A DNA stretch of 64,000 nucleotides from Rhodosorus marinus CCMP1338. Lineage: Eukaryota > Plantae > Rhodophyta. Below, piece by piece: positions 35,158 through 61,789 of this stretch (the stretch's first letter is position 1; the number at the start of each line of letters is the position of its first letter). The notes below the pieces were generated by a model. It was not told the origin of the DNA. It did no database searches and saw nothing but the letters and a program-made list of their open reading frames with translations. The DNA is taken from positions 1,116,001 to 1,180,000 of the forward strand of contig JAMWBK010000003.1 of NCBI GenBank assembly GCA_029953675.1, in the 5' to 3' direction. The translations under genes were made by a program, and so were the position numbers.

Positions 35158-36223
35158 ATGGGAAACGTTCAGACGATGATATCTGTGGGCTCAATTTTGG
35201 TCGCGACTGGGCCCAGTTGTGTCATGTTTTTAATGTTTGTTTTGCCGAGACCTAATCTTGTCGTTGTGTCACTTATCGGGTCGTTTTGGTGGTACGTATG
35301 AACGTTTTTCCTGGAGTTGGTTCGCTTTTCGGTAAGTTTTGGTTGTTTTCTCCCGTCAGTATGGTTGAATCGTCCTTGCTTCTCAACCCACCTAGGTGCC
35401 TGGCGATGTTTCTGGCTTCCGCTTTCTGGTGGGCGATACCACCCTTACGAGAAACATTTGGCTGGGTCCAATTTCTTACTGTATCATTTCAAGAAGCGAT
35501 GAGGTGGATTTTCTTCCTTCTGCTTCATTTCACAGTTTCCCGATACGAAGATCTCAAGGTTGTCGACAAATTAATGAACTGCTTTTCTGCCCTAGCTCCG
35601 AAAGACCTAAAGACTTGAGGTCGCAAACTGACGCCATCTGCTCGTCCCGCTGTGTACAGTGCTTCGTAAGGTTTGGAAGAAAATCTGTTGTCGTGCAAGG
35701 GGTTGCAATTGGTGCTGCATGGGGTGTGATGTCTGCGCTGGTCAACTACGTGGCATACCTACACGATTTCTACACACAGGACGCCTCAATATACACTAAC
35801 CTCTGTCCCATAAACTTTTGGGTAGCGAGCGCATCTTTCGCTTGCGCCTTTTCAATTCTCCATATAGCGCTCTCAACGCTTGCCTGGCAAGCTTACGTCG
35901 TGGAGAACCGCTGGATGAAAATATCTTTGTTGTTCTTGATCTATCTCGTCCACCTTGGCTTCGCTGAACTAGGTACGAAAACAAACAAAAAGAACAATCG
36001 TACTACCCCTGGCTACAGTGCTAAGCTTGTGAACAGGCTTGCTAGGAAACATTTTTGCTCCTCTCTAATCGCTCGCGTTACGCTTTGGCTAATAGGCCTC
36101 GGAAACCTCAATGCTAATGGATGTATTTGGACGATGGCGGTCACTTGGTCAGTACTTGGAGCTTTGTGTATAGTAACAGCTTACTTCACACTCAAAAGTC
36201 TTCAGAAGATCGCTCAACCTTAG
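35158..36223 (+). CDS. APH1: Gamma-secretase subunit APH-1-like multi-pass membrane protein
   Basis: MGNVQTMISVGSILVATGPS...FQEAMRW...AIGAAWGVMSAL...LCPINFW...SILHIAL...YLVHLGFAELGNLNANGC matches the APH-1 GxxxG, conserved His and 7-TM layout. Confidence 0.75.
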
Positions 36224-36472: not shown

Positions 36473-39400
36473 TCAGGCGACGTCCAGTTGAGTACGAATG
36501 TTCATTGCCGCGAGTTCGTTTGCAAGGTACTTGAAGACGTATGGCAGGTTGACCCGCTTCAGCTGGTCATTGGAGTGTCCGCAGCTCTTGCAAGTGACTG
36601 TACGCTCCGAGTTCGGTCCTCGAGTTTGGAGTTTGCTAAGGGGACTGAGCACAGAGCGACAATTCGCGCATACCCATATCGAATGAAGATCTGATGAGGT
36701 TGAAAGTCTGGTCAATCATTAAGCGGGGACAAATGAATGACAGAGTGAGCATCATAAGGGACTGGCCGCTGCTTCTGATTCAAATACAATACCTGTCATG
36801 AAGCAAATAGGCTGCTCCATATCCTAGAAGCGCATCCCTCTCCATCTCCCCAAATCGAATTGCCCCACCTACCTTACGACCACGTATGGGTTGTCTAGTC
36901 AACGGATTGATTGGGCCGGTTGACCGAACCTGTCGTTTGCCACAACACTCGTTAGCCTAATCCAGTCCCAAAGGGCCATATCCATTGGTGCGGCATACCT
37001 GAAACTTGTCGCTAACCATATGGCGTAACCGCTGGTATTGAACAACCCCGGTAAAAATCTCTACGTTGAAGGGTTCGCCTGTTTGCAAAAGATTTTTGAC
37101 CACATAATCAGCTCTACGGCTCTCCACGGCTCGCTGACCGTAGCGAACTAGGCGTAGTTGCTTACCTGTATAGCCCGAGTAAAGGGTTTCATTTCCATAG
37201 AATGAAAATCCCTGTTGCAGAAGCTGCTCTCCGAAGTAGTCGAAAGCACGCCGCTTGTCATCGAATCGAAAGGGTGTGGAGTCCTGAAACCTTCCATGGA
37301 GAGCGCCTGCCTTTCCGCACATGCTCTCGACCATCATCCCGATCGTCATACGTGAGGGAAATCCATTCGGGTTGAAGAGGATATCTGGAATAATTCCAGA
37401 TTCCGAGAACGGCATATCGCTCTCAGGCCTAAACATTGGCAGCAGTCCTGACTAGTGAGCGACACCGGATTCCCCTGTACGCGGTATTCAAGTCGGGGAA
37501 AATATTGTATTACCAGTGCGAGGATAACGTTCCCTTCTGGCCAGCTCGTGAAGCAAATTTGTCTCCAATAACTGGGTCTCGGCGGTACCGCAAGCGAATG
37601 ACTGCTCGCCTGCATCCACGATTCTCGCTACCCGCACTGGGTGCGAGTAGTCGTACCTTTGTGTCAAATGATGTCGAGAACCTAGTGAGCGAGAATAAGG
37701 TCTCTCAAGCTGCAAAGGAGTTTTAAGTACCTGATCAACCGTCGCCGTCTCCATTGCTTTATGGTGAAAGACTTTGGTTCTCCTCATCATTTTTTCTGTA
37801 AATTTGGGCGAGCTCTCCTTGAGCGTGGGATAATGGCACAGCCAGAGCTCCTTTGAAACTCCTTACCTCCATCGTCAATATCGTCCGTTATCGCGTACAG
37901 AGGATCTCCTTGCTTAAGGACCGCTCCGACATGCGGGAGTCCATCACGTCCTAGAAAGTCGTTCTCTTCGGGGCATCCAAACTGCTTCTCCTTGCCAGCT
38001 GCAGTCGCGTTCAAGAACCGATAACGAAAAAGGTTGTCAGAGATGAATCCCTCCAGTGAGAACAATATCTAATCTCAGTTCGCACCTGCGGTTTCATCTA
38101 GATCTACTATCGTCGTTGTATAGATGAAAGCCTGGCAAAAACCTCGTTCCAAGCTGGCCTTGTTTATGACCATAGCATCTTCCATGTCGTATCCAGTGTA
38201 GCTCAAAACTGCAACGACCGCGTTGATACCGTTCGGAAATACGTCAACTCCCAGTGGGTCCTGGGACACTTTGTTTCTCGCTATAGGAGTCTGCCCGGTG
38301 AGCAGCCTGTATGTCTTGGAGTCAGATCGTCTTTCGAACATGTGACAGGGCGTTCCGAGCGCCTGCTTTCCCATTTGGCACTGGTACATATTTCGTGGAC
38401 TTTGATTCATGTCCGAGAACGGCGTGAAGGACGCCAATACGCTGAGAATTCCCGTCGCGGATATTTCTTCGTGGGAAAAGCCCTCTTCCTGCTCCTCTTC
38501 CATCCCATCGTCATCTCTGACAGCGCTTCGTATCCTCAGGTGAATCTTTCATAAGATGGTGAACCAATTTTTAGCATTTGTGAATGAGGCGTCGGTCCGC
38601 TGCGCAATCCAATTCAGTCTGAAGAGAGGTGTTTCGGTGCTTACCTGCTCAAAGGGCCCCACACTCTCCTCTACTGCTGCAGATCCAGCCCGGAGCCATT
38701 TCACGCGTCGCAACAGGCGCGCTGGGGAGCTGAAGAGGAAGACACCTGCGTACGGACCACCCCTTCTCCGTGGGATGTGAGATACCTCTGTATAGCTTGG
38801 CAAAGTTGAGAAATTGTCATCAACCTTGCAGCTTCGCAATCTCCGAGTCAGAATTGAGGCGGATTCTCCATCCTCAACAAAACCGATCACGCGGCCGTCC
38901 GCGACTATGGGTATTGTAGACTTCATGACCGTATTCACAGCATACCCGATCTTCGTGGGCGGTAGAGCTCCTAAGGAACCCACAAGAGCTTCGACCTTTG
39001 AAGCATCTGCAGGGGAATCCAGTGATACGGTTGCTGCAGCAGTCAAGTGGTTGAGAAGTCCTGGAAAAGCACCAGAGTTGGAAATCGATTCTTCAGTTGC
39101 TAGTTTGCTTTGATGATGCATGCGTCGTTCTTCGTGCAACTCGTGAGCGCATACCACACGGGGCCCCGTCCGGAGTGTGAACGGGGCAGATAAATCCCCA
39201 CGCATCTGGAAGCAGCTTCCGAACTGATGTGGTCTTAACATCATTAAAAAACTGGCCTCGGTGAATGCATCGAAAGTGCGCCAGAAATCTCCAAAAGTTG
39301 ATCCTCTCCGCGACAACCGCGTAGCCGGAGGCCTGAAGCAGGTCGAGGCCAGTCTGGGTCTGCAAGTTTCCAGTAGCTAGAAAGTACTCCATTTTCCGCG

Positions 39401-40888
39401 TAATATCACGTCGACCTCTGGATATCAAACTTGTCAGGTACTTTGGTGTATGAAATTCTGCAATTACACGAGCTCGGGACTTCGGACCTCTGACGTCCTT
39501 CTCGAATAGTGCAGATATGCTCTTCAGGTACTCCTCCAGTTTCTCCCTGAGGTAGATCAGGTAGAGATGGCCAGGAAGCAGCACCTCTTGGTTCATGAGA
39601 GCATCGGGGTTGTCCTCCATGACCTCTCCACGCACGAGGGCCAGAAGCTTTTTTATCATCAGAACCAGCATATCCACCTTCGCAGCATCGAGTGTCGATG
39701 ATTCATCCTCATCGTGGTACGTACTCAGATGCACCAAGACGTACTGCCGTAACAGCTGCTTACCGGCTTCAGCGTTGTTGAGATGGGGTGGGCTCTGTAG
39801 CGGGGCTCGGAAGCGGGAACCTAGGAGAGTCAAGATTTGATGCCGATTTCCGCGGTGAAGGTCCGCCGCGTCCTTAATCATGGCAATAGCTCGTTCACGA
39901 ACGTACTGATCTTCCGCATTGTGCCCAACTATTCTGTCGAAAACATCGCTGTCCGTCGCTTCCCGGTGGAGCAGCGCTCTGATTACAGTCACAACAGGAA
40001 TGAAATACTCTTCTCGCCGAATCGTTATCCTCAGCATGACGCCGCCGGATGTTAAATAATGCAAATGGTTTGTTTTGGAAGACTGATCAGGTCTGCAGCA
40101 TCTCATAGACACTGCAGCATCGGAGTAGAGAACCCCGCGATTTCTATTGTTCGACCTGTGCAGCCCGATGACATGATGTCTTCTATTTACAATCACCATA
40201 CGAACGACCTTGGAGACGGAGAGCCGGTATGCTCACTCTCAGTAAGATCGCATAGTTCTGGGTGAGACTTGCAACTACAATCCATACCTTTTCCACGCCG
40301 TTGATAACAAAATACCCTCCGAGCTCGTATTCTTCTTCATTCTTTCGTACCAACTCTGCGGGTGTCAAACCTTCGAGATTACATTTGGAGCTTCTAACCA
40401 TGACCGGAATATCGCCCAACCTGCGAGTCAGTCTCTCCAGGATTTCGTCATTATCCGTTCGTCGAAAGACTAGTGTCCCGAACAGACCTCCCTTGTAACA
40501 GTCAGCACGGGATGAAGAGCACATTTAGAATATGAAGTAGCGCAGTGACTGCTCCAAATCTTTGCAACACTACCTTGTACGTTGCGTGCTGCTCTCGAGC
40601 ATGTCTGGGAAGCACCTTTGCAGTTCCTTCTGAACTTCCGGAAGCGGTTCTATGTCCTTGATCGGGTTTCAACACGTTCATATCTTCCAGGCTTATACTT
40701 ACAGCTGCAAGAGACGATTCATCCGGGGGCTGAAGAATAACGGGTTCAATCTCCCTTCTCATCAACCTCAGCCCTTGCCCCATGGCATAGTCGAAAGAAC
40801 CCACATGAGGCTGGATCAAATTCCTCAGCAGATCCAACCTCTCACTCTCTGCTCCGCTTAACGTGGAAGGCTGAACTTCGGAAACCAT
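36473..40888 (-). CDS. RPA2: DNA-directed RNA polymerase I second-largest subunit, multi-exon
   Basis: [28 protein letters not shown]...[33 protein letters not shown]|[68 protein letters not shown] and [16 protein letters not shown]. The Pol I-specific variants are present. Confidence 0.96.
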
Positions 40889-47941: not shown

Positions 47942-49431
47942 TCAGGAGTTTCTAATGATCGGTGAGACGATCATTTGCGAGCCCATTTCCAATAATCGCG
48001 GAAGCAACCTTCGGTGCTCCGGAATAGTCTTGTCCGTTGGCACGTAATCAAGTCGAACCTGGCCTCTCAAGGACTGTACCTCGCCACTGTATCTCATGAA
48101 ATGCTTCCTCGTGCTCGACGTCGCATGGATCACAAAATACTTGACGCCATAGCTGGCAAGGGCGCGGACTAGGACATCATGCAGGTATCTGAACAAGCCG
48201 TTCTTTCTCCGAGCCTTATGGGTTGCAGCGAATATCAGCTCCGCCGCCGTGTTATCCCCGAGAAGCCGAAAAGTACACAAGCACAAAACCTCATCATCAA
48301 GACGTAGAACTAGAGTGCGATGCATAGAATTATCCCAGTGCCGATGTTTGGCGCTTCTCAAGCTGGCGTTTATATATTCCACGTCCATCCCGTTGCGCCC
48401 ATCCACTGCTGCGAAGCATGTGTTTAGCATCTTCTGCGCTTTCTCCCACAGCTCGCCTCGTGTGGTACTCCCGATGAGTTCCAATTCGTACGCCTAGTTA
48501 CAAAACAATAAAAGAAACACTGTGAGGCTGAAGCTGCCATGTTTGCCCTCGATGGAGTGCAATATTAGAGTAACGCCAGGATATTCAAGCAGTTGATGTC
48601 AGTGCCTACCTCGTCACTGAAATCTGGAAACACCGTGGGCAATCTCTTGCTCTCGTCACACAACACTTCACGGAAGTGTAAGTCAAACTGATCAACATTA
48701 CTTAGGCAACTCTCAGAGCAGTGCCATTGGTCGTCGCTGGGCCGGGGAGGCTTCATTGAGTCAGGCATGCAATACGTGTGAAACCCACGGTTGCAGCTAT
48801 CGCAGAGGAATAGTTTCCCTGGATCATCCCCTTTGAGACATGTCTCACAAATGGCGAGGCATTCTTCCATCTCACGGAGTACCGCTTCTTGCTGTATACA
48901 ATGCTCACAATACCACTGCAGCGCGAGGTTGGTCACGTTGTTGCAAACTACATGCTCCCATACATGACAAGATTCGCACTCTACCATCTGTCGTCCATCA
49001 TCGTGATCAACTCCACAGACGCTGCAGAGGACCTTCTCCAACCCAGACCATCGTCTTCTCTTTTTACAATTCACAGCGTGTTTCCTAAGCACCGGCACCG
49101 ATGTATACACGCGACCACAATTCGAGCACGAGTAGTTCTTCCTCAAGGGAGTGCTGCGCTCGTTCGGTTCACTTGCAAGTCCAGGATAGTCTTTCGACTT
49201 TGGGCGCCTCTTTCTCGATTCCCGTTCTCGCCGCTTTGCCCTCTCGTGCTTTACCTTAACCCGACTAGGTTTTACTACCTCAGCAATACTTTCCTCATCC
49301 TCATCCAGGTTTTTCAACCATGCCAGCGCCAAAGCAAAACGCCTTTGACTCGCTGTCCTCTTACCACGAATACCATCCTTCTGACATCCTTCCAATCCTA
49401 CCCCAGGCCTTCGCAGCACCTTACCCGTCAT
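47942..49431 (-). CDS. Zinc finger + tandem PHD + GNAT acetyltransferase protein (IDM1-like architecture)
   Basis: CSNCGRVY..LRKHAVNC; PHD1 CSVC...MVECESCHVWEHVVC...WYCEHC; PHD2 CETC...LFLCDSCNRGFHTYC...WHCSESC; second exon AELIFAATHKARRKNGLFRYL...LASYGVKYFVIHA. Confidence 0.8.
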
Positions 49432-50226
49432 CGCACCAAACACATGAACGAAAACCTTAACTCCTACGCATCCTCAGCATGTCTACCTCCAACCTCTATT
49501 TCACCATTAATCACCTTCAAACATCTTAAATACTCTTATTTTCCCCGCACCTCACCACCACCAGAAGTTTTGCTTCACTAATTCAACCGCATAGTACCCC
49601 AGCCCCATCACTCCAACAACCCTACCATCACGTCTTACATCATCGAACAGAAACGTGCAGCATACTTATCATAGGGGTAAATTTTCCCGAAAAATTTCAG
49701 ATTTTTGTATTAAATAGATATATTTCGCCTTCTGAAGGCGTATTGACTAGTTTTATAGGGGGTATCACCTCCCATTCCAATTTTTGGTCTTAGGATTTGC
49801 TCAGATGGGTCTTCTGCTTAACATATTCTAGCAACACCCCTGGTAGAACGTTGCAGTTTCATTTCGTCTAATTATAGTTTTCAAAAACAAATGCCAACCA
49901 AAGGAAAGTGGATAGAAATCTAGGACTATTAACCCTGGGGGGGTACAGGTTGGCTGGAATTCTTGTGTTCGATTTGTTTTCAATAAAACAATAAGAATTG
50001 TTCCAAACGACCTCACTGGCCTCTCCCTTTTTTTATTGTTAAAAGCAAATTCTTGTCCCATCTCTTTTCCTGGCCAAGAGCAAATTTCTTTTATTAGCGA
50101 ACTGAATGTGTCAGAGGCCATATAGACATTCCATATTATCATTGTGGAGGTTTTGATTTTTGGTGCTTATGTACTCATCTCATCATCGCGTCTACCTAAA
50201 CTGTTATGTAGGGAGGCCGGTGGCGA

Positions 50227-53200
50227 ATGCAGCGTAGGGATATTTTAGCAGAGGATTTAGCAAGAGGTAAAACCCCGACGGCGTGGTATAGTGAGGAATA
50301 TCAAAAAAAAGTTGTCTGGAGATAATGGATCAGGCGATTGAGGAGAGTGAAATCCCTCATGAAGAAGGAACGGAAGGAGGTACCTCTTTCCCTGAGCTCT
50401 CAGCCAGAAAGGCCGTGCTCTTTTCTTAAAGACGCGCATGTGTCTGTTCTGGTATCGAAAGTGTATGTTTCTGTATACGCGAAGGGAAAGGACTTTGGTG
50501 TTGCTTATTTTGACCCTGTCGATCAAGAGCTTTTCCACTGCTAGTACGATGAGTGCCACTGTCACTAGCGTGTGCTTTTTTTTAGTTTTCTTTTTTCTTA
50601 TTTGATCGCTCCGAGCTCATGCGCGTGCTCCATGTCCAGCGTGAAGAATTCAGAAGCTCCGCATAGCACGCTTCGGTCAGTCCTTGACGGAATACCCAGG
50701 AAAATCTTTATTCTTTCGAACAAGGTAATAAGCCAACGGTCTGCTAAATACCTCGATTACCAAAGGACCTGGTCCAAGCTGAGGTTTCGCTTGCTCACCG
50801 AGTCCTTTGCGTAGACGAAGTCCTTGCTGAGCAAAATGTCTTTCGAGGGAGGAGGTACGCACGGAGTGGCCTATCCACCAAGAAAATAAACGCCTAACCT
50901 ATCTTAGGGGGAAATCACACCCAGACCGAAGCTCGAGTTCGTACAGAACACAGGGTGTTGAGAGCCCAGGAGCAGATGTGACCGAATCATCCTGCAGCTT
51001 TGGTCAAGTGGAAACGGCGACCATAATCCAGGCCTCTGAATTCAACTACGAGACCGCCAAGCATCGAGTTACCACAATATCGGTTGCTGGAATGCGAAAC
51101 GATCTTTCTCACCAGGAAAGGCTCAACTATCTTTCATCCAAGTTAGACTTCACTGTACATACTCCGGTCCAAGCGCTCGGCGGCCTAGTCTCCTTTTTGA
51201 TCAAGAACAATCTCTTTCGCACATCCCAAGGTTCGCCCTGTACAGCAACGTCTGATCAATGCGTGTTTGTAGTCGTTTCTCCAAACCCTTGTATCCGGCA
51301 TGTTGCTCTGCAAACAGGAGCCCCTTTCTATGTGAACGACATCAAGAGGTTTGTGCCAGAGAATCTAGTAGTCCTCGGTGAGCTTACAATCCGAGGGCTG
51401 CAGGTGTTCCACGAGAACCCACATCCCGCGATCTCGGGCAGCTTGAAATCCAAGGAGAGTTCGTCTCTATACGGAGTGGCAGACAAAACTAAGAGCTTTC
51501 ACGGAAAGCGGCTCCTACGCAAGTGGTTTCACTTTCCCCTAACGGATCCAGAGGCAATAACTTCACGACTGGATGCCATCGGAGGACTCCTAGCGCCACA
51601 CGCTATTTCTCTGCACAAGGAAATGTCACAGGCACTATGTGGCATCCGGAATGTGAAACTCTCAACTCAGAAGTAAGATACGTGCACGGAATCGCGCCAT
51701 TGGAGTCAGCCTCATATTTGCCTTGACGCTCCAGAATTGTTCAGGGTGGGTCTAGCGTCAACGACTTGGCGAACGTGTACAACAGTGCAGTTTCGATTCT
51801 TCGCCTTCGCGATATTTGTTGCTCTCTGGAAGCACCCAATTTCAAAAACCGGGTAATTTGCTTCTCGAGCGAATCAGCGCACGCCATACCTGCAAAAACT
51901 GGGCTGATTCCAGTTGCGCTCAGGCCTTCGACATGTTAGTTCAGACAGGGGACCCCGACTGTATCCGGCAACTTCGAGATTTGCTAGAAGAATCAATCAA
52001 CTTTGCGGACTCAAAAGTGGAGGGAAAAGTGTGTATCAGGGATGGCTTTGACCAAGACGTTGACAGCTTAAGGCACTCCTATATGGGTCTAGACAGTTTT
52101 CTCACGAACGTTGGAATTCAAGAGATGAAAAGGTTTTGTCAATCACGAGGGCCAGCTCTTGAACCGAGTCCTGAACAAGTGCGAATTTCATCAGTACCTT
52201 AAGCATCTTGTCTTCAACGCCCACATGCAAATCAGACTGCGGAGAGATGGGTTTCTGCTCAGCAAGTTGCACGTCATCTACTATCCGCAAATCGGATACT
52301 TAATTGTGCTCGATGTCGAGGTTCTTGAAGATTCATCTCTGGACACTGGAGAGTCAAACCTGAAGAGAATCGACCTTGACTACATGTTTTCCTCCAAGAA
52401 CCATTTGTACTATAAGAGCAAAATCATGTACGAGCTTGACAACGAACTTGGGGACATTCATGGGATCCTCGTTGTAAGCAACCCAATCAAAGAAGCCATT
52501 GGCATTTCCATCCTGCGTCTTCTGTTTTGAAAACCAGCCTCAACCTGGTCGATCAGGACGCTCAAGCCAAGGTTCTCGAGAAAATTCTGGAACAACTCAG
52601 GCCTATATTTCCTAGTTTGCTTGACGCTGTCGATGCAGCGTCAGAAGCTGATTGCCTCCTGTCACTCGCCATAACCGCTAGAGAATTGAACTGGGTGCGT
52701 CCAACATTCGATCGAGACTGTTGCATTGAAATCACAGAAGGGCGGCATCCTCTTGTGGAAGCTGTAGATTCGTCGTTCGTCCCAAATTCTTCAACCTGCG
52801 GTAAAGGGGAAGTCCACCTTGTCACAGGGCCGAACCTCAGCGGAAAAAGCGTCTATCTTAAGCAGGTAAACGCAGTTATGTGCACCGACGCGCAAACTCC
52901 ACATTCATCAGGTCCTCTTCTAACTGCTTTACAACGTGCTGGCGTAGGTTGCGCATGTCGTCTACCTCGCTCAAATCGGCTCATACGTACCTGCTTTTAG
53001 CGCCAAGCTCGGATTGTTCGAAAGCATATTCACAAGATTGTCAAGTCCTCAAAGTGTCTCAGAGCAACGATCGTCCTTCCTCCTGGACTGCTCCCAGGTG
53101 ATTCTTTTTTATCCAACACCGCTGATATCTTGACATGATGATGAAGCACATCTCGTTGAGGTGTTAACACGCGCGCTCTTGCGTCCTTGACGAGCAGATC

Positions 53201-54278: not shown

Positions 54279-55767
54279 ATGAGTGGAGAAAATCTGCTCC
54301 TCGACGCTGTTGCGGGGTTTGCTGGACATGTAAGTCGTCGGGTTTCGGATCTGAACGGCGCAATAGAATCGCAGAGATGCAAATTGCTGAACAATTGCAC
54401 ATCAGCGGCGCCCAAAACTAACAGAAAATTCGAGGTGAGGGGCTTAGATCGGCCGTCTGTAAATTTTCTGAAGGTCTGATCCGTCCTCGAGTTTCTTTTC
54501 ATCCTTCTTTTTCTATTTCGACTTTAGCTCCCTGGACATCCATTTGTGAACTTCTTTTCACGATTTTTCGTGGCAAATGCGCGCGAGCCTGACCAGGAAA
54601 ACACGACATACTTTGCTGCCGTTGACCGAATCATTGCAGTAGGAGACATCCACGGCGACTTGGGTGCGCTCAGAAACGTGCTGAAATTGTCCAAACTCAT
54701 AGGCAGTAACGATGAGTGGGTATGCGAGATACTGCGTCAATCTCTGGCAATGGTCCGTGCTTCTTATCCCATTCCTTCTGGCTCGTGGGTAGGTTGGCGG
54801 TGGAACTGTTCTTGTCCAAGTAGGAGATTTGCTCGACCGTGGGGATCAAGAGCGAGCCGCCTTTGAGCTGCTTCTGAAATTGAGAGAAGATGCCAAGAAG
54901 CATGGAGGTGCTGTCCATATACTCCATGGGAACCATGAGATACTGAACGTTTCACTCGATTTTCGTTACGTGACACCTGGTGGATTTGTCGATTTCGAGC
55001 CCTTAGCAGACCAAGCGAACGAGAAACTCGGAAAGCTTCCACCCGCAATAAGTGAGGTAGGCATGATACTGGGCGAATCACATAGACTCAAAACTCGTGT
55101 CTCCATCATAGTCACTCAACCTCAAGAACTCTCATCGTGTTGATTGAGCAGACAATCAAGGGACTACCCGAGTTCATGCGGTCGCGCGCGTGGTCGCTTC
55201 GGCCTGGTGGGCCGTTCTCAAACAGAATATCCAAGAATCAACTTGCGATTGTGATTGGAGAAAACGTGTTTGTTCATGGCGGGCTTCGTCCAACACACTT
55301 GGCCGAGCCGGGAGCCCTGGAGACAATGAACGGCGCATGTCGTGCGTGGATGCAAGGACGCACTGAAAAACCATCATCCTTGAAGACTGGCAAGAGCCCT
55401 GTGTGGATGAGGAGTTACTCTTTGGGATCACCGAAGATTGGATCTGACGAATGCAATACTCTTCAAGCTTCGCTTGATCTGATTCCAGCGAAACGAATGA
55501 TTGTTGGGTACGGTTCTTCATGATCAATTATGTCAACACAATGTTACCAGATACTGAAAGAGTACTTCTTAAATATTTATCCTGCTCAGACACACGCCAC
55601 AGCAACAGGGAATTAACGCAGCTTGCGCCGGAAAAGTCTGGAGAATAGACACCGGAATGTCCGCCGCATACGGAGGTCCCCCGGAGGCCCTCGAGATTAC
55701 TAAACGGAGAATACGTGTACTTACCGCAAAAGGCTGGCGCTCAGCCCATTCCCGCTCATTAAACTAA
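54279..55767 (+). CDS. Shewanella-like protein phosphatase (SLP, PPP family), probably organelle-targeted
   Basis: GDIHGD, QVGDLLDRG, GNHE, FVHGG, RMIVG|HTPQ and WRIDTGMS, with an N-terminal extension. Confidence 0.9.
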
Positions 55768-59413: not shown

Positions 59414-61789
59414 ATGGTTGAGAACGCGGAAGCAACGGAGGCTGTTGTAAGCGGTGAGAACTCTACAAAGGTAAGTCGTCTGAGTTATCAAGCTGCTTCT
59501 GTTTGGTTTTCTGTTGTCTCTTCATCTTTGGGTAATCGAGGTCGATTATAACACTGTCGTGGAAGGAGTTTTCGAGCTCTCCCGATTTTGGAGATCGTGA
59601 GTTCTAGTGTATTCTGACCTGTGCTTTTTTGGCTTTAAAAATTTTTCATTTAGGGAATGAGTCGGGCTGTGAAGGATCTTAGGGATGCTGGTAATGCTCA
59701 CGTGGCCAAGGGAGCTTGGTCGCGGGCTATTAACTGCTACAACAAGGCAATAGAGCTTGATGGAAACAGTGCACCCCTTTTCAGCAACCGCGCTGCGGCA
59801 GAATACCTGAACCAAGCGTATGATGCTGCATTTGAGGATTCTTTAAAGGCGATCTCCATTGATCCAACGTGGTGGAAGGGCTATAAATGGAAGGGTCTGT
59901 CGTTGATAAAGCTCAAGCGCTGGGTGGAAGCTGTAGAAGTCCTGGAGAAAGCTTGTGAGCAGTTTTCCGATGTTGCTGAACTCAACGAGAATCTGGAGAC
60001 TGCGAGGAACGAACTGGAACATGCCCAGAACTTGCTCTACGTTCTTCCGGGTCCGGAGATGATGAAGAAGCTTGATGGAATTCCCGTGTTCATTGTTACA
60101 GATGAACAGGGACAACCCTTCTTCATAACATACGAAGACGGACAGCAGGTAGGTGGCGCTGGGTCTCGTGTACTTCCGCGCCGTTTCGAAAAACTATCTT
60201 TCTGACCTGCCGTTCCGGCTCATGTCCAACTAGGTTTGTACATTTTATTTCCAACACAGCGATGCGGTTTCAACCTTGGATTGGATCAAAGAGGAGAACC
60301 CGTCTCTGGGAGAGAGGGCTGTGGTTGTAGTGATTTCTCTCTCGCAAGCTTTTCAAATGGCGCAAGACACACAGCAGCAGTACCAGAAGGAGGAGGAAGC
60401 CGCGGCTGCCAAGAAGGCGGCAGAAGCGGAGACGCAAGGTGAAGAAAATGCTGTGGAGAATGGGGAAAATGAGAAGCCTGCCGGGGAGGAACCGGCTCCC
60501 GAAACGCAGGAGGCGGAGAGCAAACCCTCTGCAACTACAGAAGAGAGTACAGGTGATGCTGAGATAGCTGCTGGTGCGGTTGAACCCAAGGCCGGTGGCG
60601 AAGATGCTGAGAAAGCGAAGGATGATGACGTGCTGGATGCTGATGTTCCCTTGGCGTTCCAGTTCCGACCGGAACTCAGTCAGGTTGGTATCCCACTAGA
60701 GAAATTACGACATGGAGGAATTGGCTCCGCTACCAGGCTGGGGGCGTGTTTGAAGTGTACTGCGCGCGCTGAACTGATTCCTCCTGATCTGCTCACCGCT
60801 CCAGGTTGAGGCGGCTGTCGAACTTCACAACAACGAGAGTTTGAGAAAGCTTTTCAAACCAGAGTTGTCTGAGGAGAGTACAGAAGGGCAGGGCAAAGAG
60901 GGCGGAGAGGAGTCCAAGGATGAAAAGGAGGACTCCGCCAAAGTTGCTGACTCGCCGGTTACACCAGATGTCGAGGAACCCAAGAAGGAAGAAGCCGAAC
61001 CGGTTGCGGAAACGGAGACAGCAGAGGCAGAAAAACCCGAGGACGTGGCTGCGGCTGATGCGGATCCAAACGAAGAGGAGGTCACTGTTGATAACTTCAA
61101 CGGAATCCCGATCTTCCAGGCAAGAGGATTGACGCTCTTGCTTAGTGGCAAGCGGTTTATTCCTCTGTTTTTCTCGAAGAAGGACCTCGAGGACGCTTGG
61201 ATACAGCTCAACAAGACGGTCACCGAGGGTATTCCTGAAGAGACTGAAATTGACGTCGGGACTCTGGAGGAGGTGCTGCGACGCATGGTCGACGGAGACG
61301 CCAAGGAGTTTGAGAACGTGATTTTTGTTCCCACTCACAAGTCATTGGAGAAGGTCGGCCGGTAAGGATTGGTTGCACGTTCTAAGATGGGAAGTTTCTA
61401 GCTTTCTCTACTGACCGGGTTGGTTTTGTTCAATATCTTCCAGCGACTTCCCTCTGGATCACTTGACAAACTCAGCATTTTTCGGAAGAAAAAAGATGAG
61501 CGCTTTTGTCGAGGCGAAGAAGATAGCCGCTGTCGGCGGAAGCAAAGAAGCCGTGAGAGAAGCGATTCAGAAGGAGCTTATCCAGCGAGTTGATAAGGAG
61601 AGATATGCCGAGCAGTTGGATAGTATTTCGAAATCCGTGAAGAAGCCAGTGATTAACAAGCCCATCGCATCGAAAGCGGCGGTGAAGCCGAGGAAGAAGA
61701 GAGATCCCCTCGCTGCGAGAACTGCGCAGGTCAGCGCAGCGGCCTCAACACCAGACGCGCCAAGTGATAATACGCCGGCATCGTCGTAG
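59414..61789 (+). CDS. TPR-Tic22 fusion protein with acidic insertions, ~5 exons
   Basis: N-terminal 3xTPR (RDAGNAHVAKG, LFSNRAAA, WWKGYKWKG) runs in one ORF into Tic22-like KKLDGIPVFIVTDEQGQP; later AFQFRPELSQ|VEAA, FNGIPIFQA, IPLFFSKKDLEDA, IDVGTLEEVL and VIFVP. Confidence 0.8.

What the first reader, a model, noticed from the sequence alone, without database searches (positions are those of the whole stretch)
59414..61789. TPR co-chaperone domain fused to Tic22, with no plastid transit peptide
Seen: the TPR triplet and the first Tic22 motif (KKLDGIPVFIVTD) lie in one uninterrupted ORF (59657-60205), so the fusion does not depend on splice prediction. The predicted first exon (MVENAEATEAVVSGENSTK) is acidic and unlike a transit peptide. 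Two long Glu/Ala-rich loops are inserted in the Tic22 fold, and there is a basic C-terminal tail. Established: Tic22 is an intermembrane-space preprotein chaperone of cyanobacterial origin, and plant Toc64 uses a TPR clamp to bind Hsp90/Hsp70-preprotein complexes and has been proposed to associate with Tic22. Inference: this could be a single-chain version of that hand-off, or a cytosolic or outer-envelope repurposed Tic22 acting as a precursor chaperone.
Basis: partly seen in the sequence, partly recalled or inferred. Interest (0 to 1): 0.78.

Follow-up and report, generated by a model that had tools for sequence, protein, structure and literature searches.

The report
Red-algal TPR–Tic22 fusion co-chaperone gene
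This is a real five-exon gene of the red alga Rhodosorus marinus that joins an Hsp70/Hsp90-docking TPR domain to a complete Tic22 chaperone domain with no plastid-targeting leader; the same unstudied protein occurs in every red-algal class beside the ordinary Tic22, so it is a candidate cytosolic helper for plastid protein import.

Summary
A five-exon GT-AG model (59414-61789, +) gives a 634-aa protein. It is 100% identical to GenBank KAJ8906622.1, a "hypothetical protein" of Rhodosorus marinus.

Architecture:
- a short acidic N-terminus;
- a three-repeat TPR domain of the Hop-TPR1/SGT type;
- a complete two-lobed Tic22 domain interrupted by two disordered Glu/Ala-rich loops;
- a conserved helical extension and a basic tail.

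The fusion does not depend on splicing. R. marinus transcripts show every junction, and the Cyanidiococcus orthologue is a single uninterrupted ORF.

The protein is not unique. About 70 orthologues cover all red-algal classes. None was seen outside red algae, within the limits of the searches. Red algae also keep a canonical Tic22 of 300-370 aa with a Phe-containing presequence, which forms a separate clade. The fusion is therefore an ancient paralogue, not the red-algal Tic22.

The five carboxylate-clamp residues are K-N-N-K-R in nearly all members. In R. marinus they are R-N-N-K-W.

No paper describing the family was found. The most likely role is a cytosolic or plastid-surface co-chaperone that links Hsp70/Hsp90 to plastid-bound clients. 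That role is inferred, not shown. The Toc64-to-Tic22 "single-chain hand-off" reading is not supported. I rate it a new variant of a known kind, of moderate interest.

The parts
59414..59470 (+). Exon 1: start codon plus 19 codons (MVENAEATEAVVSGENSTK). Acidic N-terminus, not a transit peptide.
   Evidence: GT donor at 59471. There is an in-frame stop 8 codons upstream and no other start codon. The same N-terminus appears in R. marinus transcripts P0001 and P0087. An isoform, P0290, starts at Met21 instead.
59654..60148 (+). Exon 2: whole TPR domain and the first strand of the Tic22 N-lobe (residues 20-184).
   Evidence: It lies in one ORF, 59657-60205. The junction sequences STK|GMSRAV and GQQ|VCTFYF are present in transcript P0001.
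59666..60031 (+). TPR domain, residues 24-145: three TPR motifs plus a capping helix, of the Hop-TPR1/SGT type.
   Evidence: Pfam TPR_1/TPR_2/TPR_11 score about 1e-10 to 1e-11. Hop scores 5e-28 and SGTA 1e-12 by sequence. AF2 pLDDT is 96-98, and Foldseek gives TM 0.91-0.94 and rmsd 1.0-2.0 A to SGT, Sgt2 and Hop TPR1.
59888..59890 (+). Codon TGG = Trp98, at the position of Hop Arg77, the fifth carboxylate-clamp residue.
   Evidence: Clamp positions read R29-N33-N64-K94-W98 here and in P0001. In family members that cover all five positions they read K-N-N-K-R, or R-N-N-K-R in Cyanidiales. R98 is at least 90% conserved in alignment A1.
60032..60386 (+). Tic22 N-lobe, residues 146-235. It spans intron 2 (60149-60233).
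   Evidence: Pfam Tic22. Invariant P163, F165, Q173-P174-F175-F176, Y189-F190. pLDDT 89-96. 100% identical to the other R. marinus strain.
60387..60641 (+). Acidic loop 1, residues 236-320 (Glu 25%, Ala 24%, net charge -19).
   Evidence: Composition. pLDDT is below 50 for residues 276-317. Length ranges from 11 to 200 residues among orthologues. 72% identical between strains, against 100% in the lobes.
60642..60837 (+). Central Tic22 strand-helix, residues 321-345 (PLAFQFRPELSQVEAAVEL). It spans intron 3 (60684-60804).
   Evidence: Invariant F326, F328, R329. It corresponds to the canonical MVFRFYPD..QV motif. pLDDT 82-91.
60838..61074 (+). Acidic loop 2, residues 346-424 (Glu 25%, net charge -17).
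   Evidence: Composition. pLDDT is below 50 over most of residues 351-423. Length ranges from 11 to 268 residues among orthologues.
61075..61468 (+). Tic22 C-lobe, residues 425-528. It spans intron 4 (61362-61443).
   Evidence: This is the best Pfam Tic22 stretch, residues 414-515. Invariant N431, F432, G434-I435-P436, F438, G442-L443, G486-T487-L488-E489. 100% identical between strains.
61469..61639 (+). Conserved C-terminal helical extension, residues 529-585 (…AKKIAAVGGSKEAVREAIQKEL…). It is specific to the family.
   Evidence: Conserved across all classes: A544, G551, R558 in at least 90% of sequences, and A560 invariant. Helices at 542-549 and 554-584. No Pfam family matches it.
61640..61789 (+). 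Disordered basic tail, residues 586-634 (contains KPRKKR), plus the stop codon.
   Evidence: Net charge +7. The tail is net positive in 66 of 70 family members, although the proteins as a whole are strongly acidic. pLDDT below 50.

Best explanation
The locus is the Rhodosorus marinus orthologue of a protein family found across red algae, in which a Hop-TPR1/SGT-type TPR domain is fused directly to a complete Tic22 domain. The two modules are separately folded and flexibly linked. The Tic22 lobes are interrupted by two variable acidic loops, and are followed by a conserved helical extension and a basic tail. The family is an ancient paralogue of the canonical, presequence-bearing Tic22, which red algae also retain.

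Most likely mechanism: the protein stays in the cytosol, perhaps held at the plastid surface by its basic tail. There it acts as an adaptor co-chaperone. The TPR groove docks on the C-terminal EEVD tails of cytosolic Hsp70/Hsp90. The Tic22 lobes, which are a holdase fold with hydrophobic pockets in the solved Tic22 structures, hold plastid-destined clients in an import-competent state. These clients could be transit-peptide precursors or outer-envelope proteins.

Shown here: the gene structure, the domain identities and folds, conservation across red algae, paralogy with canonical Tic22, and the absence of a presequence and of any transmembrane segment.

Inferred: the location, the Hsp70/90 partnership and the clients.

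Confidence in the anatomy and family assignment is about 0.95. Confidence in the cytosolic plastid-import co-chaperone mechanism is about 0.4.
For: - Gene model and identity to KAJ8906622.1.
- Domains by sequence: Tic22 at 102 bits and TPR at about 1e-10. A Tic22-only profile hits Chlamydomonas Tic22 at 9e-30, Anabaena at 1.4e-14 and P. falciparum at 2.5e-14.
- Domains by structure: the AF2 domains are confident. Foldseek finds four solved Tic22 structures (TM 0.59-0.80) and SGT/Sgt2/Hop-TPR1 (TM 0.91-0.94).
- Domain linkage: pTM is only 0.57-0.59, even for a loop-free orthologue. The domains are therefore not rigidly packed against each other.
- Splice-independent fusion: transcripts and the single 2013-nt ORF in Cyanidiococcus.
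- Distribution: about 70 orthologues, including Chondrus, Gracilaria, Pyropia, Porphyridium, Erythrolobus, Galdieria, Cyanidioschyzon/Cyanidiococcus and Rhodosorus.
- No presequence: N-termini are short in most complete orthologues, and the clamp is K-N-N-K-R in almost all of them. The maximum 19-residue hydropathy is 1.16, so there is no membrane segment.
- Canonical paralogues: they carry Phe at positions 2-8, few acidic residues and a hydrophobic stretch. That matches the Phe-based red-algal targeting motif described in PMC12531127.
- Separate clades: 100% and 84% bootstrap.
- Purifying selection on the folded parts: Tic22 lobes 100% and TPR 95% identical between strains, against 72-80% in the loops.
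- From established knowledge: TPR domains of this clamp class bind the EEVD tails of cytosolic Hsp70/Hsp90.
Against: - There are no localisation, binding or genetic data for any family member.
- In R. marinus the clamp is R-N-N-K-W. Loss of the Arg equivalent to Hop R77 may weaken or change peptide binding in this species.
- Plant Tic22 itself reaches the intermembrane space with an atypical signal, so absence of a classical presequence does not prove a cytosolic location.
- Absence outside red algae is only weakly tested. The word-index searches have limited sensitivity, and the exhaustive search listed only hits above 203 bits.
- I could not show that R. marinus itself has a canonical Tic22. 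I showed it only for Purpureofilum, which I place in the same class from memory, and for other red algae.
- The KPRKKR tail also resembles a nuclear localisation signal.
Confidence: 0.42

Rival explanations
1. It is an envelope or intermembrane-space Tic22 isoform that enters the plastid without a cleavable presequence. There the TPR domain binds a translocon component, such as Toc75/Omp85 POTRA domains or TIC subunits, rather than cytosolic chaperones.
For: - The Tic22 domain is complete and its core motifs are invariant.
- All functionally studied Tic22 proteins act in the periplasm or intermembrane space (established knowledge; structures 4ev1, 4e6z, 8xks, 8xqw).
- Plant Tic22 uses a non-standard targeting signal (established knowledge).
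- The degenerate clamp in R. marinus suggests that EEVD binding is not indispensable.
Against: - A folded TPR domain starts within about 20 residues of the N-terminus, with an acidic leader.
- Red algae already have a canonical Tic22 with a presequence.
- The TPR is of the class that binds cytosolic Hsp70/Hsp90, and its clamp is conserved in nearly all orthologues.
- It has no hydrophobic sorting segment, unlike the canonical paralogue.
Confidence: 0.15
2. It is a general cytosolic Hsp70/Hsp90 co-chaperone with no specific link to plastid import. On this reading the Tic22 fold was simply recruited as a generic client-binding (holdase) module, as in SGT or Hop.
For: - The TPR resembles SGT, Sgt2 and Hop most closely.
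- NCBI named the Porphyridium orthologue SGT-beta.
- No targeting signal or membrane anchor is present.
- Nothing in the sequence specifies plastid clients.
Against: - The Tic22 fold is otherwise known only from cyanobacterial and plastid protein-transport contexts (established knowledge).
- The family is confined to a plastid-bearing lineage, as far as the searches can see.
- The SGT-defining N-terminal dimerisation domain and Gln/Met-rich C-terminal domain are absent.
Confidence: 0.22
3. It is an artefact: a chimeric gene model that joins a TPR gene to a neighbouring Tic22 gene, or a model that misses an upstream transit-peptide exon.
For: - The gene has four introns.
- Within the single ORF 59657-60205 alone the Tic22 profile match is weak (E=0.11).
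- Some orthologue models carry long odd N-termini (P0045, P0059).
Against: - The TPR and the first Tic22 strand share one ORF.
- Transcripts from R. marinus span all junctions.
- The Cyanidiococcus orthologue is a single 2013-nt ORF.
- About 70 orthologues share the architecture.
- There is an in-frame stop 8 codons upstream of the ATG, and the transcript ORFs start at that Met or at Met21.
Confidence: 0.02

Closest known systems
Canonical Tic22 (pea Tic22, Arabidopsis Tic22-III/IV, Chlamydomonas Tic22 in 8xks/8xqw, Anabaena Tic22 4ev1, P. falciparum Tic22 4e6z, red-algal canonical Tic22 such as Cyanidiococcus CCYA02G0637)
   Same: It has the same Pfam family (PF04278) and the same two-lobed fold. 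The core motifs (PVF…GQP, FRF/FQF-P, G-[IV]-P-[IV]-F…KGLT, PLFF-K-DL) are retained.
   Different: - It has no presequence or hydrophobic sorting stretch. An N-terminal TPR domain takes that place.
- It has two long acidic loops, a conserved C-terminal helical extension and a basic tail.
- It forms a separate clade from red-algal canonical Tic22.
- Its location and function are untested.
Clamp-type TPR co-chaperones: Hop/Sti1 TPR1 and SGTA/Sgt2 (also CHIP, PP5, RPAP3)
   Same: It has three TPR motifs plus a capping helix. Structural similarity is TM 0.91-0.94 with rmsd 1-2 A. The family consensus keeps all five carboxylate-clamp residues.
   Different: - The partner domain is Tic22, not DP/STI1, a Gln-rich domain, a U-box or a phosphatase.
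- There is no SGT-type N-terminal dimerisation domain.
- In R. marinus the clamp reads R-N-N-K-W.
Toc64 / OM64 / OEP61 (plant organelle-surface TPR docking proteins for Hsp90/Hsp70-bound precursors)
   Same: The concept is shared: a clamp-type TPR domain placed in a plastid-import context. The OM64 TPR is among the structural matches (6q3q and 6hpg, TM 0.89-0.93).
   Different: - It has no amidase-like domain and no membrane anchor.
- The TPR is N-terminal rather than C-terminal.
- It is soluble.
- It is not homologous outside the TPR.
- From my own knowledge, not tested here: Toc64 is reported absent from red algae.
At5g62650-type Tic22-like proteins of land plants (529 aa, non-canonical, function unknown; PMC3652856)
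   Same: It is another long, divergent Tic22-domain paralogue that coexists with canonical Tic22 and is uncharacterised.
   Different: That clade is described as specific to land plants. Only about 335 of its 529 residues are Tic22-like, and no TPR is mentioned. I could not retrieve those sequences, so any relationship is untested.
Tom34 (animal cytosolic TPR co-chaperone for mitochondrial precursors)
   Same: It is a functional analogy only: a soluble TPR protein that links Hsp70/Hsp90 to organelle-bound precursors (own knowledge).
   Different: It has two TPR domains, no Tic22 domain, and serves a different organelle and lineage.

Membership tests
Tic22 family (PF04278 / TIGR00995) | Profile match above the curated threshold | tested here: met
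   Pfam Tic22 scores 102.1 bits against a cut-off of 23, in two stretches. The Tic22-only profile scores 9e-30 against Chlamydomonas Tic22. The NCBIfam TIGR00995 subfamily scores only 81.8 bits against a cut-off of 413. The protein therefore belongs to the superfamily but not to that narrowly defined subfamily.
Tic22 family (PF04278 / TIGR00995) | Two-lobed (butterfly) Tic22 fold | tested here: met
   AF2 lobes have pLDDT about 85-96. Foldseek probability is 1.00 to 8xks_I, 8xqw_Q, 4e6z and 4ev1, with target TM 0.59-0.80.
Tic22 family (PF04278 / TIGR00995) | N-terminal targeting presequence leading to the intermembrane space or periplasm | tested here: not met
   The N-terminus is acidic and only 19-23 residues long, has no Phe, and is followed directly by the TPR. 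There is no hydrophobic stretch. Canonical red-algal Tic22 proteins have both features. Actual localisation cannot be tested with these tools.
Tic22 family (PF04278 / TIGR00995) | Preprotein binding or chaperone activity during import | not testable with these tools
   This needs biochemical assays.
Clamp-type TPR co-chaperone domain (Hop TPR1 / SGT class) | Three TPR motifs plus a C-terminal capping helix | tested here: met
   Seven helices span residues 17-145 with pLDDT 96-98. TM is 0.91-0.94 to 1elw, 2vyi and 5lyp.
Clamp-type TPR co-chaperone domain (Hop TPR1 / SGT class) | Five carboxylate-clamp residues (Hop K8, N12, N43, K73, R77) | tested here: inconclusive
   The family consensus is K-N-N-K-R, which meets the feature. 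The window protein and the other R. marinus strain read R-N-N-K-W: three identical, one conservative change and one non-conservative change.
Clamp-type TPR co-chaperone domain (Hop TPR1 / SGT class) | Binding of Hsp70/Hsp90 C-terminal EEVD peptides | not testable with these tools
   This needs ITC, fluorescence polarisation or pull-down experiments.
Toc64 / OM64 | Amidase-like domain, N-terminal membrane anchor and C-terminal TPR | tested here: not met
   There is no amidase Pfam hit and no hydrophobic segment (maximum hydropathy 1.16). The TPR is N-terminal.
SGT / Sgt2 | N-terminal dimerisation domain and Gln/Met-rich C-terminal client domain flanking the TPR | tested here: not met
   The TPR starts at about residue 17-24, and the C-terminal partner is Tic22. 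The "SGT-beta" name of the Porphyridium orthologue rests on the TPR alone.
Cns1/TTC4 (the UniProt automatic name of this protein) | C-terminal wheel domain | tested here: not met
   There is no Wheel-domain Pfam hit, even at E up to 1-10.

The most novel reading that the evidence does not exclude
TPR-Tic22 is the missing cytosolic guidance factor or soluble receptor of the minimal red-algal import system. On this reading a periplasmic chaperone fold of cyanobacterial origin was moved to the host cytosol and wired to Hsp70/Hsp90. It would recognise Phe-type transit peptides or outer-envelope clients and deliver them to Toc34/Toc75. That would be a lineage-specific solution, parallel to plant Toc64/OEP61 and to animal Tom34.
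Probability: 0.3. Interest if true: 0.75.

Novelty: new variant of a known kind. Interest (0 to 1): 0.55.

Why it matters
Plastid import has been worked out almost entirely in green plants. From my own knowledge, red algae are reported to lack several plant receptors (Toc159-type and Toc64), and how precursors are chaperoned to the red-algal envelope is not known.

This protein is universally conserved in red algae and under strong purifying selection. It couples a cytosolic-type Hsp70/Hsp90 docking module to the one chaperone fold that is specific to cyanobacterial and plastid protein transport. That makes it a concrete, testable candidate for the cytosolic step.

It also matters for bookkeeping. 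At least one database entry called "Tic22" in a red alga (Galdieria sulphuraria XP_005704591.1) is a truncated model of this paralogue. Inventories and phylogenies of Tic22 may therefore have mixed the two proteins.

Galdieria partita is genetically tractable (PMC12145455), and so, from my own knowledge, is Cyanidioschyzon merolae. Localisation and knockout tests are therefore practical.

Tried and rejected
- Exhaustive search with the full-length profile A1 instead: the list was flooded with multi-TPR proteins. Only 13 of the 150 listed carry a Tic22 domain, and all are of red-algal type. The listing cut-off was 203 bits, so weaker non-red fusions are not excluded.
- Word-index search with A2: it returned only 16 hits and oddly omitted most full-length family members. 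I therefore use it only for the paralogues it revealed.
- Look-up of a likely stylonematophyte canonical Tic22 (P0144) in genomes: nothing on record. A canonical Tic22 in R. marinus itself is therefore not demonstrated.
- Cluster look-ups gave no taxonomy for the unnamed Logan and JGI hits.
- Galdieria partita proteome supplements are not held, so there are no expression data for g2524.
- Seven full-text searches found no description of a TPR-Tic22 protein. An eighth was uninformative.
- Membership of Toc64, SGT and Cns1/TTC4: considered and rejected (see the membership tests).
- A chimeric gene model or a missed upstream transit-peptide exon: considered and rejected.
- Second AF2 run on the loop-free Porphyridium orthologue, to see whether the TPR and Tic22 domains pack rigidly: pTM 0.59, so no fixed arrangement is predicted.
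- The NJ tree is a rough distance tree built on columns defined by the fusion family. It contains one green, one apicomplexan and three cyanobacterial sequences. It supports two separate red-algal clades, but it cannot date the duplication relative to the red/green split.
Full report
**What is at the locus**

The region 59414-61789 on the + strand contains a five-exon gene with canonical GT..AG introns. The exons are 59414-59470, 59654-60148, 60234-60683, 60805-61361 and 61444-61789. The 1905-nt CDS encodes 634 aa. This model is 100% identical over its full length to GenBank KAJ8906622.1, "hypothetical protein NDN08_003115 [Rhodosorus marinus]". The window is therefore nuclear DNA of the stylonematophyte red alga R. 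marinus. Other ORF fragments in the window are ordinary eukaryotic genes: Rpb2, MutS, a PHD finger and Aph-1.

**Checking the gene model**

- Transcript-derived proteins from other R. marinus strains show every junction. P0001 (MMETSP0315) contains STK|GMSRAV, GQQ|VCTFYF, LSQ|VEAAV and KVGR|DFPLD.
- P0087 and P0290 read into intron 2, and P0290 starts at Met21.
- An in-frame stop lies 8 codons upstream of the ATG at 59414. No upstream ORF resembles a targeting exon.
By itself that ORF gives only a weak Tic22 score, E=0.11.
- The stronger splice-independent evidence is the Cyanidiococcus orthologue, which is one uninterrupted 2013-nt ORF with the same architecture.

**Domain anatomy**

- Pfam: Tic22 (PF04278) scores 102 bits against a cut-off of 23, in two stretches. 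TPR_1, TPR_2 and TPR_11 score about 1e-10.
- PDB by sequence: the N-terminal 120 residues resemble Hop (5e-28; TPR1 domain 56 bits), SGTA and Sgt2. The remainder matches Chlamydomonas and Plasmodium Tic22.
- A profile of the Tic22 part alone, with the loops removed, matches Chlamydomonas Tic22 at 9e-30, Anabaena Tic22 at 1.4e-14 and P. falciparum Tic22 at 2.5e-14, across both lobes.
- AlphaFold2 with a 39-sequence alignment gives pLDDT 96-98 for a seven-helix TPR domain (residues 17-145) and about 85-96 for the two Tic22 lobes. pLDDT is below 50 for residues 276-317, most of 351-423, and 586-634.
- Foldseek against the PDB returns four solved Tic22 structures (8xks_I, 8xqw_Q, 4e6z, 4ev1; target TM 0.59-0.80). 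It also returns SGT, Sgt2 and Hop-TPR1 at TM 0.91-0.94 and rmsd 1-2 A.
- pTM is 0.57. It is 0.59 for the compact, loop-free Porphyridium orthologue. The domains are therefore predicted to be well folded but not rigidly packed against each other.
- The two inserts (residues 236-320 and 346-424) are 25% Glu with net charges of -19 and -17. The tail (586-634) has net charge +7.
- There is no membrane-like segment. The maximum 19-residue hydropathy is 1.16, and it falls inside a beta-strand.

**The family**

A search of 5.8 billion proteins found about 70 proteins with the same TPR + Tic22 architecture at E below 1e-50. The named ones are all red algae, covering every class sampled: Rhodosorus, Chondrus, Gracilaria, Pyropia, Porphyridium, Erythrolobus, Galdieria, and Cyanidiococcus/Cyanidioschyzon. 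After these, the list drops straight to Hop-like proteins.

An exhaustive HMMER scan of 1.84 billion cluster representatives with the full-length profile listed 150 proteins. Only 13 of them carry a Tic22 domain, and all are of the red-algal type. One of these, P0150, was new and resembles the Cyanidiales members. The other 137 are multi-TPR proteins. The listing stopped at 203 bits, so a weak fusion outside red algae is not excluded.

Conservation is concentrated in four regions: the TPR, both Tic22 lobes, the central FQFRP strand, and a family-specific C-terminal helix (…AK.IA..GGS.E..R.AI…). The loops vary from 11 to more than 200 residues. Between the two R. marinus strains the Tic22 lobes are 100% identical and the TPR 95%, against 72-80% for the loops. 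The tail is net positive in 66 of 70 members, although the proteins are strongly acidic overall.

**No transit peptide, and a separate canonical Tic22**

In most complete orthologues the TPR begins 5-35 residues after the first Met, and the leaders are not presequence-like. Red algae also encode a conventional Tic22 of about 300-370 aa that contains PF04278 only. It was found in Cyanidiococcus, Compsopogon, Agarophyton, Purpureofilum, Gracilariopsis and Porphyra.

The N-termini of these canonical proteins have Phe at positions 2-8 and few acidic residues, followed by a hydrophobic stretch. That matches the Phe-based targeting motif of rhodophyte transit peptides summarised in PMC12531127.

In a bootstrapped neighbour-joining tree of the Tic22 domain, the fusion proteins form one clade (100%) and the canonical red-algal proteins another (84%). 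The fusion is therefore an ancient paralogue that was present by the last common ancestor of the sampled red algae. It is not "the" red-algal Tic22. I could not confirm the canonical copy in R. marinus itself.

**The clamp**

Aligned to Hop TPR1, the five carboxylate-clamp positions (K8, N12, N43, K73, R77) read K-N-N-K-R in almost all members that cover them. They read R-N-N-K-R in Cyanidiales. In the window protein and in the other R. marinus strain they read R-N-N-K-W. Trp98 is the codon TGG at 59888-59890. The family therefore looks like a true EEVD-binding co-chaperone class, but this species carries a non-conservative change at one clamp residue.

**How it most likely works**

The facts shown are:
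- a soluble protein with no presequence;
- a TPR module of the class whose known ligands are the C-terminal tails of cytosolic Hsp70/Hsp90 (established knowledge);
- a flexibly tethered Tic22 module, a fold known only as a periplasmic or intermembrane-space chaperone for proteins in transit;
- a basic tail;
- strict conservation in a plastid-bearing lineage alongside a normal Tic22.

The best-supported inference is a cytosolic or plastid-surface adaptor co-chaperone that holds plastid-destined clients and exchanges them with Hsp70/Hsp90. I put the probability of this at about 0.4.

The rivals are:
- a general cytosolic co-chaperone with no plastid specificity (about 0.2);
- an intermembrane-space isoform imported without a presequence (about 0.15);
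- a gene-model artefact (about 0.02, effectively refuted).

The protein has no Toc64 features, and the canonical Tic22 still exists separately.

**What is already known**

Databases hold these proteins under several names:
- "hypothetical protein" or "tetratricopeptide (TPR) repeat protein";
- "Tic22-like protein" (Gracilaria domingensis);
- "Small glutamine-rich TPR protein beta" (Porphyridium);
- "Cns1/TTC4 wheel domain-containing protein", the UniProt automatic name for this very protein. Pfam does not support it;
- "chloroplast inner membrane import protein Tic22, putative" (Galdieria sulphuraria XP_005704591.1). This entry is only the C-terminal half of the fusion gene.

Full-text searches of the held library found no paper that describes or tests a TPR-Tic22 protein. 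The Tic22 evolution paper PMC3652856 used Cyanidioschyzon data and noted a different non-canonical Tic22-like clade in land plants (At5g62650). It does not mention TPR.

**Verdict**

The gene is an annotated but unnamed member of an uncharacterised family found across red algae. That family is a new variant of the Tic22 kind, fused to a clamp-type TPR. Interest is moderate (0.55): it is a concrete candidate for the cytosolic step of red-algal plastid import and can be tested in tractable red algae, but every functional statement is still inference.

Noticed in passing
P0001 (R. marinus MMETSP0315 transcript product, 790 aa) versus window 60387-61074: The other-strain transcript repeats a block of about 150 residues (end of loop 1, the FQFRP strand, loop 2 and the start of the C-lobe) twice. 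This explains its extra length. It could be a transcriptome assembly artefact or a strain-specific tandem duplication.
   Followed up: no
window 59471-59653 (intron 1) and 60149-60233 (intron 2): Some transcript-derived ORFs from R. marinus read through intron 2 (P0087 and P0290 end …GQQVDAAGSCVLDSLSRN). P0290 starts at Met21 (MSRAVKDL), which suggests isoforms that retain an intron or lack exon 1. None adds a targeting sequence.
   Followed up: partly
P0074 = Galdieria sulphuraria XP_005704591.1: This database entry is named "chloroplast inner membrane import protein Tic22, putative". It is a truncated model, the C-terminal 308 residues of the TPR-Tic22 paralogue. It is not the canonical Tic22, so published red-algal Tic22 inventories may mix the two.
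   Followed up: partly
window 59414-61789 (UniProt A0AAV8UZV8): UniProt's automatic name for this protein and its transcript fragments is "Cns1/TTC4 wheel domain-containing protein". No Wheel-domain Pfam match appears, even at permissive thresholds.
   Followed up: yes
window 59888-59890: Trp replaces the otherwise at least 90% conserved clamp Arg (Hop R77 equivalent) in all R. marinus sequences. It is a one-base change from CGG or AGG. It may mean altered peptide specificity in this lineage.
   Followed up: partly
Galdieria partita genome (GpartN1_g2517 and GpartN1_g2524): TOC34 (g2517, named in PMC12145455) and the TPR-Tic22 orthologue (g2524) are only seven gene numbers apart. This is probably coincidence.
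   Followed up: no
C-termini of orthologues P0050 (Erythrolobus) and P0051-P0055, P0064 (Bangiales): The Erythrolobus protein ends in …KKGGCCGSC and the Bangiales proteins end in …APVSAC. A basic stretch followed by terminal cysteines could be a lipidation-type membrane anchor.
   Followed up: no
window 35396-36223 (+), 39093-40199 (-), 48565-49443 (-), 50978-51676 (+), 54546-55523 (+): ORF fragments of ordinary nuclear genes: Aph-1-like, RNA polymerase Rpb2 domains 2-3, a PHD finger and MutS domain III. By reading the GDIHGD and GNHE motifs, there is also a metallophosphoesterase-like gene just upstream of the locus.
   Followed up: partly
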